From Podarcis erhardii (lineage: Eukaryota), in NCBI GenBank assembly GCA_964252035.1, contig OZ176216.1: DNA of 64,000 nucleotides. One strand, written 5' to 3'. Of this stretch, positions 1 to 48,703 are shown one piece after another. Numbering within the stretch: position 1 is the stretch's first letter; every line of letters starts with the position of its first letter. The position numbers and the translations under genes are program-made. The notes beneath the pieces were generated by a model. That model ran no database searches and was not told the origin of the DNA. It saw nothing but the letters and a program-made list of their open reading frames with translations.

Positions 1-268
1 CTCATTGCCAAGAGTCAGGCACTAAGGCCTCAACTCCTTGCCCTTCAAAGGAGAAGTGATGGCTGCCACGTTCTTAGGCACCTCTCATTCAACAGAAACG
101 TGGCCAGTAATCCAAAGGGCAAGGGCTCAGCAGAGGCCGGCTGGCCAAAGGGCTGACTCTATTTTCAGCTGGACTAAGTAAGTCGGCCTCCTCAGGTGTA
201 AATGGCAGCCCCTCCCTCGCTGGGAGAGCAGAGGAGCCCCCCCCCCCATCACCACTGCCTGCTCTTAC

Positions 269-374
269 CGCAATTCCCTCAGCCTCGTATTCCTCCTGCT
301 CCGATTTCAGCGTGAGCTCGATGAAGAGCTGCTGCAACTTCTCATTGCAGTAATTGATGCAAAACTGCTCAAAG
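269..374 (-). CDS. MYO1C: MYO1C exon 12 ([35 protein letters not shown])
   Basis: CAG acceptor, GTAAGA donor, 106 nt, myosin relay-helix sequence. Confidence 0.96.
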
Positions 375-704
375 CTGCAAAGGAGGGAAGGCAGAAAAGA
401 GCGCTTGGCCCCAGCAGAGACTCTGACCCCCTCCCCCTCCAAGCAACCACTTTCACTGAAGGGGGGGGGCACAGTCATGGGTGGCAGAGCGAGACCCACC
501 TCCCTGCTGGTGCTGGGTCTTCTCACGGCCATGCTGGCCTGCAGCAACCAGGGGTGCCGAGTTTCAGTGGCACAGCACAAGGTCAGAGACAAAGCCTGGT
601 GGAGAGCAGCCTGAGGCCAGCCCTGTGCCAGGCAGCCCCTTGCCCCTTGGAAGACAGGCAGCCCCTCCTCTTCCTCCTCCTGGGCAGGAGTCAGGAAAAC
701 CCAC

Positions 705-790
705 CTGTTGTGCTGGAAAACCTCGAAGCCGTAGATGTCGAGCAGCCCCAGGACAGAGGCGCTGCTTCTCCAGCCCAGGCACTCCGTCTC
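705..790 (-). CDS. MYO1C: MYO1C exon 11 ([29 protein letters not shown])
   Basis: Switch II DIYGFE; CAG...GTGGGT; 86 nt, phase 0-2. Confidence 0.95.
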
Positions 791-1014
791 CTGCCAAAAG
801 ACACAGGGGAGTGAGAGCCCCCCTGGGAACGGCACCCTCCCCTTGCCCCCTGCCCTGCCTGCCTGGAAAACGGGGACTTTGCTCCTGTCCCAGCAAAGCC
901 ACCCTTGCAGAAGGAGGCCTGCTCCTTGTGGGCCCCTTTTCCGAAGCAAGGCCTCCTCCACGGAGGGTGCCGCCCAGAACCCAGCGGCCGTCATGGGGAG
1001 AACAGGCTGCTGAC

Positions 1015-1134
1015 CTTGTAGGCGAGGGACTTGTTGATCTTGCCCACGAGCCACGAGAAGGTGCGCCCGTAGATGGCCTTGGCGAGGGCGTCCCGTGCGT
1101 AAGCCGCCTGCTCCAGGTTGAGGGGGCTGACCAG
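1015..1134 (-). CDS. MYO1C: MYO1C exon 10 ([40 protein letters not shown])
   Basis: DALAK motif; 120 nt; CAG...GTCAGC. Confidence 0.96.
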
Positions 1135-1315
1135 CTGCAAGGAAGGAGCTGCCGTCAGCCTCTCTCCAGCCAGCGGACTCGGGAGGGAGGGCAAGCAGGT
1201 ACCCAAACCACCTCCCATGGATATGGCCACAGGGACCATCACCAGGAAACACCCCTGGGTGGGCCTGGCCGCCTCCCCCCACCCTCCGCGGCAGTCAGCT
1301 GGCCAACCCTCTTAC

Positions 1316-22699: not shown

Positions 22700-23880
22700 A
22701 GGCCCGCGTCTTCGGCGAGGCAGCGGCTGGCTGGCAGCAGGCGGATTAGGCTGGGGAGCAAGAGCCACGCTTCGCCGCGGGCAGCCCAGGTGCCCTTCCG
22801 CTTTCGGGCGGCGGCGGCCTCGCAGACACCCGCCCCGCCCCGGGGCAGCCGCCTCCCTCCTGCTCCGGCGCCGAAGCGAAGTGGTTGTCGGCAGCGCCAG
22901 AGCGGGGCCTCCTCGGGAGACAGCGAGACCCGCCGCCCGCCGGGACACCGGCCCAGCCCTGGCCGCGGGGAGCCCACCGGGGAGGGGCCGCATTCACAAG
23001 GGACACGCGGACACGGGACTCCTCCTCTGCACGCGGAGACCTAGCTCCTCAGGGTCGGAGGGGGCGGGGTCGCCGCGCGCCAGAAGGGCCCGCAGCTCCG
23101 CCGGGCTGCCTTCGCCCCCGTGGGAGACCCGGGCCAGCGGGCGGCGGGGCAGGCGCTCTGCCCATGCTCAGAGGTCCGTCCTCCGCCTCGCCGCTCCCTC
23201 CCGGCCTACCTTGCGGAGTGAGCTGCTGCTGCCGCCGCCTGGCCCTCCCGCTCCGCTCCGCCGCGCCCTCCTCGTGCCCCGTCGGCGACGGTCCCTCCAG
23301 CCGCTCGATCGGCGGCGGCGGCAATTGGGGCTCCCGTCACGGGCCGGGCGGAGCCGTGGCAAGGGCGGAATGCGCCTGCGCGGCGGGGCTCGCGGGCCGG
23401 CCTGGCTCGGGCCCTCCTGAGGGGGGGGGCGGGGGCGGGAGGGCAGGAGAGCGGCCTGGCCCCGCCCCGCCGCGCCTGCGCGCCCCTCTCTGCTCCCCCG
23501 CCCCCGCGGGCCCGTTTGCGCGGGAAAGGAGCGCGCGCGCGAGAAGCGGCCTCCGGACTCCTGAGTCTCCGTGTCCCTGAGGGAACTTCCTCCGCCGCCC
23601 CGCTAGCTGAGGCGTTTCCCCGCCTCGGCCGCGCTCCAGGGGCCCTGGGGACCATCCGTGGTGGAGCTGGAGGGCCTCTCGGCGACGCCTGGGCCCGGCA
23701 CCAGCCCTCAGAGCCGCCGCCGCCGCCGCTGCTGCCCGTCCGAGTGGGCAGCGCTGAGCGAGGCCTGAGCGGGTCCGAGGCGGCTCCCTGCGCAGGGAGA
23801 GGGATCCCGAGGAGCCTCGTCCTCTTTGCCGGAGGGCCTCTCTGGGGCGCGGCGAGGGCGGAAAGGCCAGGCCTTTAATG
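22700..23880. promoter_or_regulatory. MYO1C: CpG island, main MYO1C (isoform C) promoter
   Basis: Very high GC and CpG density; several GGGCGG boxes at about 23360-23470; contains a donor at 23209. Confidence 0.85.
23210..23400 (-). other. MYO1C: MYO1C non-coding first exon (isoform C); 5' end approximate
   Basis: Donor CCGCAAG|GTAGGC inside the CpG island; no ATG in the exon; translation would start at the exon 2 ATG (5873). Confidence 0.6.
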
Positions 23881-24133
23881 CTGGCGGTGACTTTTAAATA
23901 CAAGTTCTCACATTTGTCAACTCTGGGAGGAGGAAGAGAGCTTGGGACCTGCTCTGCTCACATGAAGAAAGCAGGAGAGCATTGCAATTCGCTGCAGCCC
24001 TTCCCAGGCGCCACTGCCAGGAGGAGAGCAAAGGCCGACCTGGAAAATAGATGAGGGCTCTGCCATGCAGAAGCCCCAAGGAGACTTCCGGCGGGATTTA
24101 GCCACATGCTGCGGGTTGCACAGCACATACACT

Positions 24134-46381: not shown

Positions 46382-46489
46382 CCAATGACATACATGTCCA
46401 TTTCCTGGTCTTGCACGTTGAGCTGCAGCAAAGAGGTGACATCAGGAGGGGGAGAAGCTGTGCCCACGTTCCAAGTCACCAAGTGCAAC
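46382..46489 (-). CDS. INPP5K: INPP5K exon 2 (LHLVTWNVGTASPPPDVTSLLQLNVQDQEMDMYVIG)
   Basis: VTWNV motif; 108 nt, phase 2-2; AAG...GTAGGT. Confidence 0.96.
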
Positions 46490-46671
46490 CTTCAGAGACA
46501 GACAAAAGGCAGTGCAGCTGAAGTACAAACAGGTGGGGACAGGTTCCTGTCCGGCACAGCTACCTCGTCATCCCATTAACCTCTCCCCCTCCTCGTGCCT
46601 TATTATCTGTAATCCTGCCCTAAAAACACCAACGCCCCGCTGGAGAGAGCCTGTCTGCCTGGGAAGGGCAC

Positions 46672-46949
46672 CTGATCCCCAGAAGCTTCTGCTTCTGCAT
46701 CTTCCCACAGATCAGAAAAGCCTCGTCGATGGTGCGTGAGACTTCCTCGTGGATCTCGTCATCGGAGCTGACGTCCTCCACGCAAGCCATGAGCTGTGCC
46801 ACTCGCTGCCGCAGCTGCAGCCGCCCGCTGGAGCCCGCGCTGCTCACACTGGCAGAGCGGCTGCGCAAGGCAGAGGGGGTGCCCTCCAGGTCCAGCAAGG
46901 AGACGGAGAGCAAGTCCTGAAGCGGCTCTTCAGGCTGCAAAGATGCCAT
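46672..46949 (-). CDS. INPP5K: INPP5K alternative first exon 1B, 92-aa N-terminal extension (MASLQPEEPLQDLL...RQRVAQLMACVEDVSSDDEIHEEVSRTIDEAFLICGKMQKQKLLGI)
   Basis: 278 nt open frame from ccccATGG to donor AG|GTGCCC. Phase 2 matches exon 2, 182 nt away. Codon-like, CpG-retaining composition. Confidence 0.72.
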
Positions 46950-48220
46950 GGGGCCAGAAGGAGAGGGGCATGCCCCACGCCCCACCCAAGGCGCCCCCCA
47001 GCCAGAGAAGTGTCAATGTAGGCAGAATTAAGCCTTGCTTCTGGCACAAGCTAAGCAAGGAAGCCGTCAACCGCACCAGAAGGCAACTCTGAGGCAGGAA
47101 GGGAGGTCCTCTTCCTCTCCTTGCAAGCCCTCAAGGTGCACCCCCCACACCCATGCCACGCGCCAAGATTTAATGCCACTGGAGCCTGGAGATTTATGAA
47201 AAGCTATTGTTAACTGAGGCCAATCACATGTTTCTGCCACTGTGTCATGGAGGTATAATCACTGGTTTTGAGGCACGTGCCCCACATGGAGGGATTGCCA
47301 AGCCAGGGACCAAATCTGACAAGTGAGCCCCTCAGGAGGCTTTTATTAACACAGCTTCTGGCTAGGAAGGGGTTTGGGGGGTCAGAGGTGGCTGTTGGAG
47401 CTTAGCTTGTGGTCAGAGAAGTGTGGGGAAGGGAAAACATATTTGGCCTGTTACAGGTGGCCTTGCAAATGCTGCCAGACTACAGCTCCCATCACCCCTG
47501 AGCACTGACTCCGCTGCTTGCTGGGAACTAGAGCCCAACATCCACTGGAGGTTCTCCGCAAATACAGGCGCTGCAAAGGCAGAACGCGGATGTACCGCGC
47601 AGGGCCGCGGTTTGGAAGACCTGGCTGGGACTTAAGCGCAAGGCCCCCGTCCCGCGGGAGGAGGGAGAAGCGCCACCGGCAGGCAGCCCGGCAGCCCCCG
47701 ATCCTGGGCGTGTTCCCGGCCGCCTGCCTTTCCGCGGGCGCGCCTGATCACCGCCCCCGGAGGATGTGGAAAGTGCGGGCCGGAGAGCCCCTTTGGCAGC
47801 GGGCGCAGCACCTGCTAAGTAAGCGGCCCACGCAGGACTCAAATCCCAGCCGGTGCTTTGCAAGCCGAAATCGGCTTTCGCGCTTCCCGCGGCGATTAGC
47901 ATAACTCCCGCTCCGGAGCCTCGGCGCCGCATCCGGGGGCTTTGCTGTAAGAAGGAGCGCCTGTCCGCGGGCGGAGGCCGGTCACGGGGCCCCGAAATCC
48001 TTCGGGAGGGGTTGCTGCCTCCTCGCGGGAAACCCCAAGGGGGCGGAGGAGCCTCGCGGGAGTGGGGGCGCCACTTGGGGCAGGCAGGCAGGCAGGCGGG
48101 CAGGCTCGGGCGCACTCTGCACATGCCCAGGGACTCCCTTGACTCCGCCGGGGGCACGTGGGCCAAAGGGGAGTTTCCCCAAGACGGGTCCCCCGCGCGC
48201 CTGGGCAGGCGCGGCCTCAC

Positions 48221-48252
48221 CTGAGACGCCGCCGTCCTTCCTCCGGCTCCAT
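48221..48252 (-). CDS. INPP5K: INPP5K exon 1A coding part (MEPEEGRRRLR)
   Basis: gccgcgATGG context; ends CTC AG|GTGAGG, phase 2, like human ...GRRLS. Confidence 0.9.
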
Positions 48253-48574
48253 CGCGGCTGCCCGAGAAAGAAGAGGAGGGCGAGACGGCCGAGACCGGAG
48301 GAAAGAGCTCGCTCCGCTCTTGTGACCGCTCCGGCCAATCGGGGCAGGGGACGAGGTCGGCGCGCCTCCTGATTGGCTGGGATGCCAAGAGGCCGCGTCG
48401 TTCTGAGCACGTGATGCAAACAACGGGTAGCGAACGCAGAGCTACGCAAAAAGGATAGAGTGTCATATCCCTTGCATTTCCGGATAGAAACAAGAAGCTG
48501 CCCAAAGAAGTCAATGGGGTTTTGAGGGTCGCTGCGCCGGAAGATGCGACCCTGGTGCCTGCTGCTGTTCATGA

Positions 48575-48703
48575 TTTGAATTAATTTTATAATGAAATGA
48601 TTTTAGAATGTTGTATTATTTTATTGTTGTTAGCCGCCCTGAGCCCGGCTTCGGCTGGGGAGGGCGGGATATAAATAAGATTTATTATTATTATTATTAT
48701 TAT
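48575..48703 (+). mobile_element. L2 LINE 3' tail with (ATT)n
   Basis: Near-identical to 57220-57360: gttagccgccctgagcccggcttcggctggggagggcgggatataaataa. Confidence 0.85.

What the first reader, a model, noticed from the sequence alone, without database searches (positions are those of the whole stretch)
46672..46949. Second INPP5K first exon adding a 92-aa N-terminal module not in the canonical human protein
Seen: an ATG-initiated 278-nt frame ending at a phase-2 donor 182 nt upstream of exon 2. It replaces the 11-aa exon 1A and gives a ~542-aa isoform. There is no nearby upstream acceptor, and a GC/KLF box (gggtggggcgtggggc) precedes it, implying its own promoter. The peptide has an RSRSASVSS segment (RxRxxS, an Akt/14-3-3-type site), an amphipathic helix LRQRVAQLMACVEDV and an acidic helix SSDDEIHEEVSRTIDEAF. 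Established: human INPP5K/SKIP is an ER-associated PI(4,5)P2/PIP3 5-phosphatase that dampens Akt signalling. Inference: a phospho-regulated targeting or interaction module, possibly kept in non-mammalian vertebrates and lost in mammals. The GTGCCC donor is weak.
Basis: partly seen in the sequence, partly recalled or inferred. Interest (0 to 1): 0.7.

Follow-up and report, generated by a model that had tools for sequence, protein, structure and literature searches.

The report
Ancient alternative first exon of INPP5K
Inside this lizard's INPP5K gene lies a real alternative first coding exon that gives the lipid phosphatase a 92-residue N-terminal extension; it is kept in fishes, frogs, lizards and birds, is not reported in humans, is already predicted in fish gene catalogues, and has never been studied functionally.

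Summary
On the minus strand, an ATG-initiated 278-nt frame (46949-46672) ends at a GT donor in phase 2. It lies 182 nt upstream of INPP5K exon 2, and the short exon 1A (48252-48221) has the same phase.

The exon is real. Orthologous ORFs occur in birds, a skink and a tree frog. Conservation stops exactly at the donor. dN/dS is 0.09-0.19 with saturated dS. One bird RNA contig joins this exon directly to exon 2.

More than 70 RefSeq/UniProt ray-finned-fish INPP5K isoforms start with the same module, joined at the same R|LH.VTWNV junction. Short-leader isoforms exist from the same genes. A 2023 zebrafish paper mentions this "alternative exon 1" as a predicted transcript not found in humans. I found no functional study.

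AlphaFold predicts a disordered leader carrying a nearly invariant R-x-R-S-x-S motif, followed by two confident amphipathic helices. There is no Pfam, PDB-fold or Atlas match.

A different block 215-315 nt upstream is shared with the skink and two birds, and is the better promoter candidate.

Phospho-regulation and loss in mammals fit the data but are not proven.

Verdict: a true, ancient, catalogued but uncharacterised isoform, of modest novelty.

The parts
46672..46949 (-). Exon 1B coding part: ATG plus 92 codons plus 2 nt (phase 2). It encodes the N-terminal module of the long INPP5K isoform.
   Evidence: sequence and translation. (16 orthologous ORFs; conservation ends at the donor). (dN/dS 0.09-0.19). 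(codon-position identity 88/91/60% to the skink). (fish INPP5K isoform X1 residues 27-73 align here, 60% identity, E 6e-14).
46670..46671 (-). GT donor of exon 1B (cag|gtgccc). It is non-consensus at +4 to +6.
   Evidence: The orthologous donors in the skink, a bird, a frog-like contig and a fish-like contig sit at the same codon position and are also non-consensus: GTTCCG, GTTACG, GTCTTC, GTGGTG. The site is used in bird RNA.
46490..46671 (-). Short intron (182 nt) between exon 1B and exon 2.
   Evidence: The orthologous introns are about 146-680 nt.
46382..46489 (-). INPP5K exon 2: start of the 5-phosphatase domain, (R)LHLVTWNV...MYVIG.
   Evidence: (aligns to fish INPP5K residues 74-109).
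48221..48252 (-). Exon 1A coding part: MEPEEGRRRL plus 2 nt, phase 2, donor gtgagg. This is the canonical short leader and lies in a CpG island with CCAAT boxes.
   Evidence: Fish short isoforms have 7-19-residue leaders joined at the same R|LH.VTWNV point.
46848..46865 (-). Codons for R29-S-R31-S32-A-S34: a basophilic-kinase-type R-x-R-S-x-S motif in the disordered leader.
   Evidence: R29 invariant; R31, S32, S34, S37 at least 90% conserved over 43 sequences from fish to birds. (residues 1-38 have pLDDT below 50).
46767..46829 (-). Predicted helix 1 (residues 41-61), amphipathic, with a conserved L46/V50/L53/V57 stripe and conserved R47, R49, Q52, D59.
   Evidence: AlphaFold2, block pLDDT 83-84. 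(conservation).
46674..46760 (-). Predicted helix 2 (residues 64-92). It holds the invariant A77-F78 of the ..SRT[IL]DEAF.. core.
   Evidence: block pLDDT 78-93..
47163..47262 (-). Conserved non-coding block 215-315 nt upstream of the ATG. It contains an E-box (CATGTG, 47230-47225), ATTGG, AACAAT, a TATA-like ATAAAT (47197-47192) and ATTAAATCT. It is the candidate promoter of exon 1B.
   Evidence: (69% identity to the skink, against about 50% around it). (the block is also recognisable in two bird contigs). Its function is inferred only.
46971..46986 (-).
   Evidence: Present. It aligns to gaps and mismatches in the skink and is absent in birds. It is not supported as a conserved promoter element.

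Best explanation
This is the lizard copy of an ancient alternative first coding exon of INPP5K (exon 1B). The gene has two mutually exclusive 5' coding exons, both ending in phase 2 and both spliced to exon 2. Exon 1A is driven by a CpG island and gives a 10-residue leader. Exon 1B lies in intron 1, 182 nt upstream of exon 2, and gives a 92-residue N-terminal extension in front of the unchanged 5-phosphatase and SKICH body.

The extension has two parts. The first is a disordered acidic, Ser-rich leader with a nearly invariant R-x-R-S-x-S motif. The second is two amphipathic helices (residues 41-61 and 64-92) around the core LRQR.aQL..C.ED..SDDE...EEVSRT.DEAF.

Shown here: the exon is under strong purifying selection as protein, it is spliced to exon 2 in other species, and it is orthologous to the N-terminus of fish INPP5K long isoforms.

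Inferred:
- It is transcribed from its own promoter in intron 1. The best candidate is the conserved block at 47262-47163.
- The helical pair is a protein-interaction or targeting unit whose use is switched by phosphorylation of the adjacent basophilic site (Akt/SGK/RSK/PKA-type, with CK2-type sites at SSDDE). This would give non-mammalian vertebrates an isoform-specific link between PI3K-Akt signalling and this PI(4,5)P2/PIP3 5-phosphatase.

The confidence given is for the shown part (a real, conserved alternative first coding exon and long isoform). My odds for the own-promoter inference are about 0.65, and for the phospho-switch mechanism about 0.3.
For: Anatomy.

Conservation:
- 16 Logan ORFs at 60-84% identity, with an invariant start Met and similarity that ends at the donor.
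- dN/dS 0.09-0.19 at dS 0.8-2.4.
- Third-position wobble and an 80% exon against about 50% flanks versus the skink.

Splicing:
- RNA contig L001 joins the exon directly to exon 2, exactly where the genomic bird contig L003 has its GT..AG intron.
- GenBank POI27118.1 of the bird Bambusicola has the same join.

Orthology:
- The profile search found 40 hits, including INPP5K isoform X1 of Alosa.
- 71 full-length ray-finned-fish INPP5K proteins, including Danio, Amia, Acipenser and Polyodon, start with the module and continue with LH.VTWNV.
- The fish module aligns to 46820-46680 and the next residues to exon 2.
- Short-leader isoforms from the same fish genes join at the same point.

Taxa: skink, tree frog, galliform-like bird.

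Structure: AlphaFold2 gives a disordered 1-38 and helices 41-61 and 64-92 with block pLDDT 78-93. R29 is invariant, and R31, S32, S34 are at least 90% conserved.

Gene identity: a complete INPP5K exon series lies at 48.2-37.7 kb, with a myosin-head exon of the expected neighbour at 89-1282.

Literature: PMC10239392 lists the zebrafish alternative exon 1 transcripts, adding 63 and 48 aa, as predicted and not found in humans.
Against: - There is no transcript evidence from this species, and the transcription start is unknown.
- The donor is non-consensus at +4 to +6.
- Kozak position -3 is C. An out-of-frame upstream ATG (46971) overlaps the start, which would lower translation if the 5'UTR begins upstream of it.
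- The bird RNA contig extends 1.3 kb upstream without splicing and retains intron 2, so it mixes pre-mRNA with mRNA and says nothing about the promoter.
- Birds and the frog have an AG just before the ATG, compatible with an upstream non-coding exon.
- The functional part has no direct support: no family, fold or complex prediction gave a lead.
- I found no annotated full-length tetrapod protein with the module, although my searches were biased towards fish.
Confidence: 0.88

Rival explanations
1. The coding exon is real but is not a first exon with its own proximal promoter. On this view it is preceded by an unrecognised non-coding exon further upstream in intron 1, or is read from transcripts that start at the exon 1A CpG island. 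In the second case the exon 1A ATG would act as a short upstream ORF.
For: In two bird contigs an AG with a pyrimidine-rich run lies directly before the ATG. The frog-like and fish-like contigs have an AG within 6 nt. The bird RNA contig runs 1.3 kb upstream of the ATG, past the conserved block.
Against: In this window and in the skink there is no AG in the last ~50 nt before the ATG. The nearest candidate acceptor, about 100 nt upstream, falls in a stretch deleted in the skink. Splicing exon 1A (phase 2) onto any site at or just after the ATG shifts the frame into early stops (read from the sequence). A block with E-box and TATA-like motifs 215-315 nt upstream is conserved between lizards and birds. 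The zebrafish paper and RefSeq treat it as an alternative exon 1.
Confidence: 0.2
2. It is a chance open reading frame in intron 1 that happens to end at a GT in the right phase.
For: The window is GC-rich and full of long ORFs: 101 of at least 110 aa. The phase match alone has a one-in-three chance. The donor is weak by consensus.
Against: There is protein-level conservation from ray-finned fishes to birds, with dN/dS 0.09-0.19. Similarity ends exactly at the donor. A spliced junction is seen in RNA and in gene models.
Confidence: 0.01
3. The module is mainly a constitutive dimerisation or scaffold element (a helical hairpin forming a four-helix bundle, as in coiled-coil dimer domains), not a phospho-switched targeting unit. 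The Ser-rich leader would be a passive linker.
For: Both helices carry a single 3-4 spaced hydrophobic stripe. A profile of the module gives a weak match (E 7e-4 in a PDB-sized search) to the dimeric C-terminal coiled-coil domain of RPRD1B, including ..SKTVDEACLL.. against ..SRTLDEAFLL...
Against: The R-x-R-S-x-S motif in the disordered part is as conserved as the helices, which a passive linker would not require. The RPRD1B match is not backed by Pfam or Foldseek, and it did not appear in the 1.84-billion-protein search.
Confidence: 0.2
4. In this particular lizard the exon is an evolutionary relic that is no longer used, although its orthologues are.
For: There is no expression data for this species. 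An out-of-frame upstream ATG overlaps the start. The tail (KMQKQKLLGI) departs from the bird and skink consensus.
Against: The frame, start codon, donor position, phase and all invariant residues are intact. dN/dS against the skink is 0.13, which is not expected for a decaying exon.
Confidence: 0.04

Closest known systems
Teleost and other ray-finned-fish INPP5K long isoforms (RefSeq isoform X1/X2, e.g. XP_041948639.1 of Alosa sapidissima; zebrafish inpp5ka XM_009291785.3 and inpp5kb XM_021479345.1, 'alternative exon 1')
   Same: The N-terminal module is homologous: R-x-R-S-x-S, then LRQRL.QLL.C.EDLSSDDE..EEVSRTLDEAF. The start Met is the same, the junction to exon 2 is the same (..FR|LH.VTWNV), and a short-leader isoform coexists from the same gene.
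   Different: The fish modules are shorter (69-87 aa) because the acidic leader before the motif is only about 8 residues. Fish have R-x-R-S-D-S where sauropsids have R-S-R-S-A-S. The tail after DEAF differs. This copy is from a lizard, where I found no annotated full-length protein.
Canonical human INPP5K/SKIP (448 aa) and mouse Inpp5k (468 aa)
   Same: The catalytic 5-phosphatase plus SKICH body is the same, as is the exon 2 start (..VTWNV..). The short exon 1A leader of this window corresponds to the human short N-terminus (the human and mouse sequences are from my own knowledge, not checked here).
   Different: No module of this kind is described for the mammalian proteins. PMC10239392 states that the fish alternative-exon-1 transcripts are not found in humans. 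No recognisable mammalian hit appeared in the profile search.
INPP5J/PIPP, the SKICH-containing paralogue
   Same: It is a 5-phosphatase plus SKICH enzyme with an isoform- or gene-specific N-terminal regulatory extension (established knowledge).
   Different: Its N-terminus is proline-rich and unrelated. No INPP5J protein was hit by the module profile.
RPRD1B (CREPT) C-terminal coiled-coil domain, PDB 4fla/4nad
   Same: There is weak local sequence similarity over about 50 residues covering both helices (E 7e-4 in the PDB-sized search).
   Different: It has not been shown to be homologous: no Pfam CREPT hit for any of the 43 members and no Foldseek match. The protein context (a nuclear Pol II CTD-binding protein) is different.

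Membership tests
INPP5K orthologue (gene identity of the locus) | A complete 5-phosphatase plus SKICH coding series collinear with known INPP5K | tested here: met
   tblastn of fish INPP5K isoform X1 finds collinear exons from 46820 down to 37710 on the minus strand. The fish proteins carry PF22669/PF03372 and PF17751 (SKICH).
INPP5K orthologue (gene identity of the locus) | Conserved neighbourhood next to MYO1C | tested here: met
   A myosin-head (PF00063) exon lies at 89-1282 on the same strand. That MYO1C neighbours INPP5K is from established human synteny, recalled and not checked here.
INPP5K alternative-exon-1 long isoform (as annotated in fishes) | N-terminal peptide homologous to the fish module | tested here: met
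   60% identity, E 6e-14 to Alosa residues 27-73. A profile built on the tetrapod copies retrieves fish INPP5K isoforms at E 1e-15 to 1e-27.
INPP5K alternative-exon-1 long isoform (as annotated in fishes) | Joined to exon 2 at the same codon and in the same phase as the short leader | tested here: met
   Phase 2 for both 1A and 1B. The module ends ..R and is followed by LH.VTWNV in all named fish proteins, in bird RNA and in a bird model.
INPP5K alternative-exon-1 long isoform (as annotated in fishes) | Translation starts at a conserved ATG within the exon | tested here: met
   The start Met is conserved in at least 90% of 43 aligned sequences. Exon 1A cannot supply the frame (read from the sequence).
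INPP5K alternative-exon-1 long isoform (as annotated in fishes) | Transcribed and spliced in this species, from its own start site | not testable with these tools
   No RNA data for this genome were available. There is only a conserved upstream block.
AGC/basophilic-kinase substrate site (R-x-R-x-x-S/T) | Arg at -5 and -3 of a Ser in an accessible region | tested here: met
   R29 and R31 before S34. R29 is invariant, R31 and S34 are at least 90% conserved. The region is predicted disordered.
AGC/basophilic-kinase substrate site (R-x-R-x-x-S/T) | Actual phosphorylation by such a kinase | not testable with these tools
   This needs phosphoproteomics or kinase assays.
14-3-3 mode I site (R-S-x-pS-x-P) | Pro at +2 of the phospho-Ser | tested here: not met
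   Position +2 is Ser (R-S-A-S-V-S here; R-S-D-S-x-S in fishes). Sites without Pro are known, so binding is not excluded, but the consensus is incomplete.
RPRD1/CREPT coiled-coil domain | Significant match to the family model or fold | tested here: not met
   There is only a PDB-scale E of 7e-4. No Pfam hit in 43 members and no Foldseek hit.

The most novel reading that the evidence does not exclude
The module is an ancient regulatory domain of jawed vertebrates, lost on the mammalian lineage, that places INPP5K under direct feedback from PI3K-Akt (or another basophilic kinase). On this reading, phosphorylation of the invariant R-x-R-S-x-S site next to the helical pair would switch a protein interaction that relocates or gates the phosphatase. 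Fish, frog, reptile and bird cells would then tune PI(4,5)P2/PIP3 turnover through an isoform that mammals lack. Zebrafish and chick models of INPP5K disease would carry an extra, unrecognised layer of regulation.
Probability: 0.2. Interest if true: 0.6.

Novelty: new member of a known kind. Interest (0 to 1): 0.3.

Why it matters
INPP5K mutations cause congenital muscular dystrophy with cataracts and intellectual disability, and zebrafish is used to model the disease. This work shows that the 'extra' fish isoform is not a teleost oddity. It is a strongly constrained module (dN/dS about 0.1) shared by ray-finned fishes, frogs, lizards and birds, with a conserved kinase-type motif and a confident helical pair.

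That makes the long isoform a defined and testable object. Isoform-specific knockouts, phospho-mutants and interactomes are all feasible. It also warns that knockouts or morpholinos aimed at exon 1A, or rescue experiments with the human-like short form, may miss part of the gene's function in non-mammalian models.

For genome annotation, it is a correct isoform call for this lizard.

Tried and rejected
- Pfam on the peptide, on the full 121-aa ORF and on all 43 aligned members: no meaningful family.
- ESM Atlas feature search: no usable hit.
- Foldseek of the AlphaFold model against the PDB: nothing below E 3.8.
- Complex prediction of the fish module (Alosa residues 1-74) against the rest of the same protein (75-525): no verdict, score 0.00, controls not run. 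This is no evidence either way.
- Third word search, using an alignment of a full-length fish protein plus the tetrapod modules, meant to reveal annotated tetrapod long isoforms. It was swamped by fish INPP5K: 2265 hits, of which only the best 120 were listed, all fish. It is uninformative on whether lizard or bird catalogues hold the isoform.
- The earlier region-restricted search listed only fishes, although bird modules share a run of words with the query. I treat that as weak evidence only.
- The sigma-70 promoter and terminator scan is irrelevant to a vertebrate and found nothing.
- SRA accessions of the contigs were searched in papers. Only the skink and the tree frog could be named. The bird RNA run and the 'MDEIS...' fish-like group remain unidentified.
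- Earlier scan notes near this place: none.
- I did not build the joined exon 1B + exon 2 + ... coding sequence, so the ~542-aa length and a fold of the full lizard isoform were left out.
- No human sequence was fetched, saved or compared.

Full report
**Observation.**
On the minus strand an ATG at 46949 opens a frame of 92 codons plus two bases. The frame ends at 46672 in front of a GT (cag|gtgccc). After 182 nt an acceptor (ctctgaag|) opens the exon that encodes (R)LHLVTWNVGTASPPPD...MYVIG, the start of the INPP5K 5-phosphatase domain.

The canonical short first coding exon lies 1.3 kb further upstream in a CpG island with CCAAT boxes. It runs from ATG 48252 to 48221, encodes MEPEEGRRRL plus two bases, and has the donor gtgagg. 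It ends in the same phase. So all the coordinates and the arithmetic of the finding are right.

By itself the ORF is not surprising, because this GC-rich window holds 101 ORFs of at least 110 aa. The case therefore rests on comparison with other species.

**Gene identity.**
A fish INPP5K protein aligns collinearly to exons from 46820 down to 37710 on the minus strand. A myosin-head exon of the expected neighbour lies at 89-1282. Notes of this scan on other pieces of the genome call it a lizard. This fits with the closest genomic relative of the exon being a skink.

**The exon is coding and conserved.**
- A word search with the 92-residue peptide found 16 unnamed ORFs from public read assemblies at 60-84% identity.
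- In their alignment the start Met is invariant. The similarity is very high through ..EFR and vanishes at the residue where this window has its donor.
- Four genomic contigs show the same layout. The exon ends ..CAG|GT, a short intron of 146-680 nt follows, and then comes the LH.VTWNV exon.
- Pairwise Nei-Gojobori estimates between the window, the skink and two bird copies give dN/dS of 0.09-0.19 at dS of 0.8-2.4.
- Against the skink, the exon is 80% identical with codon-position identities of 88/91/60%. The intron start and most of the 5' flank are at 47-50%.

**It is spliced to exon 2.**
- Contig L001 (Logan, SRR23174759; bird-like sequence) carries the exon joined directly to exon 2, exactly where the genomic bird contig L003 has its GT..AG intron. 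It also carries spliced exons 3-5, so it derives from RNA.
- That contig also retains intron 2 and 1.3 kb of upstream sequence. It therefore mixes pre-mRNA with mRNA and does not locate the transcription start.
- A GenBank model of the bird Bambusicola thoracicus (POI27118.1) contains the last 40 residues of the module fused to exon 2.

**It is the orthologue of a catalogued fish isoform.**
- A profile of the tetrapod copies, searched against 1.84 billion representative proteins, gave 40 hits. They include INPP5K isoform X1 of Alosa sapidissima (525 aa) and an INPP5K-like protein of Megalops.
- Searching with the first 75 residues of the Alosa protein returned 71 full-length INPP5K proteins of ray-finned fishes, including zebrafish, bowfin, sturgeon and paddlefish.
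- In every one the module ends in ..R and is followed by LH.VTWNV.
- The same fish genes also give isoforms with 7-19-residue leaders joined at the same point. This is the 1A/1B arrangement of this window.
- A zebrafish paper (PMC10239392) notes that inpp5ka and inpp5kb have predicted transcripts 'not found in humans' with an alternative exon 1 adding 63 and 48 residues. The authors did not study them. It was the only paper holding both INPP5K and 'alternative exon 1', and I found no functional study.

**Distribution.**
- A further diverse group of ORFs (MDEIS...) comes from runs I could not identify.
- No hit was recognisably mammalian. However, most hits are unnamed, and representatives at 50% identity hide isoforms of known proteins. 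'Lost in mammals' is therefore consistent with the data but unproven.
- I found no annotated full-length tetrapod protein with the module. The one search designed to find one was swamped by fish proteins.

**What the peptide looks like.**
- AlphaFold2 on a 43-sequence alignment predicts residues 1-38 as disordered (pLDDT below 50).
- It predicts two helices, 41-61 and 64-92, with block pLDDT of 78-93.
- Across the 43 sequences the invariant positions are R29, L53, A77, F78 and the junction R.
- M1, R31, S32, S34, S37, L46, R47, R49, Q52, D59, E65, V70, D75 and G82 are at least 90% conserved.
- So a basophilic-kinase-type R-x-R-S-x-S motif sits in the disordered part just before helix 1. Both helices carry a 3-4 spaced hydrophobic stripe plus conserved charged residues. 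An SSDDE turn (CK2-type) links them.
- The 14-3-3 mode I consensus is incomplete, because there is no Pro at +2.
- Pfam, the ESM Atlas and Foldseek gave nothing.
- A PDB profile search gave a weak match to the dimeric coiled-coil domain of RPRD1B (E 7e-4). I record it as a lead, not as homology.
- A test of the fish module against the rest of its own protein returned no verdict.

**Promoter.**
- A block at 47262-47163 is 69% identical to the skink, against about 50% around it, and is recognisable in both bird contigs. It contains an E-box, ATTGG, AACAAT, a TATA-like ATAAAT and ATTAAATCT.
- It is the better candidate for the exon 1B promoter, which would give a 5'UTR of roughly 200 nt. This is inference only.
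- In the window and the skink there is no AG in the ~50 nt before the ATG. In birds and the frog an AG lies 0-6 nt before it, so an upstream non-coding exon remains possible in those lineages.
- Exon 1A cannot feed this frame. Any join at or just after the ATG runs into early stops (read).

**Mechanism, with odds.**
- That this is a real, functional alternative first coding exon giving a long INPP5K isoform: about 0.9.
- That it has its own promoter within about 300 nt: about 0.65.
- That the module is a protein-interaction or targeting unit switched by phosphorylation of the R-x-R-S-x-S site: about 0.3. The main alternative is a constitutive dimerisation or scaffold element.

**Rule compliance.**
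The spliced model was searched exon by exon, by reference. The joined coding sequence was not built, so the ~542-aa figure is plausible (fish long isoforms are 515-550 aa) but unverified. No contig was taken for human, and no human sequence was used.

**Verdict.**
It is not a new kind of thing, because fish catalogues and one paper already list it. The new points are its depth of conservation in tetrapods, its anatomy and the candidate promoter block.

Noticed in passing
window 47163-47262 (minus strand): A non-coding block 215-315 nt upstream of the exon 1B ATG is conserved between this lizard, a skink and two birds. It contains an E-box with a T/A flank (CATGTG here and in the skink, CACGTG or CACATG in the birds), an AACAAT motif, a TATA-like ATAAAT and ATTAAATCT. 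It is a possible tissue-specific promoter.
   Followed up: partly
window 46969-46971 and 47152-47154 (minus strand): Two out-of-frame upstream ATGs sit in the putative 5'UTR. The nearer one opens a 13-codon ORF that overlaps the main start. The skink has an ATG at the aligned position. This could damp translation of the long isoform.
   Followed up: partly
window 89-1282 (minus strand) and 23000-24000: There is a myosin-head exon (Pfam PF00063, E 1.5e-19), presumably of the MYO1C neighbour, and a 74% GC island about 23 kb away that may be that gene's promoter.
   Followed up: partly
window 48600-48700 (minus strand): An (AAT)n microsatellite, followed by a repeat-like element (..tatatcccgccctcc..gggctcagggcggct..), lies just upstream of the exon 1A CpG-island promoter. 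It resembles a squamate SINE from memory.
   Followed up: no
P0017 (Silurus meridionalis KAF7701266.1): This annotated catfish protein contains the module twice in tandem (residues about 6-66 and again about 75-135) and lacks part of the phosphatase start. It is either a local duplication or a gene-model artefact.
   Followed up: no
L001:1-21 and 1706-2350: The bird RNA contig begins with an Illumina adapter fragment. It retains intron 2 while introns 1B, 3 and 4 are removed, so it is a mixed pre-mRNA/mRNA assembly.
   Followed up: partly
alignment A3 against PDB 4fla/4nad: There is weak local similarity of both helices to the dimeric coiled-coil domain of RPRD1B (E 7e-4 at PDB scale). It is unsupported by Pfam or Foldseek.
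   Followed up: partly
window 47528-48514 (minus strand): A 328-aa ORF runs through the exon 1A CpG island and intron 1. It is Pro/Arg/Gly/Ser-rich and looks like a GC-composition artefact, not a gene.
   Followed up: no
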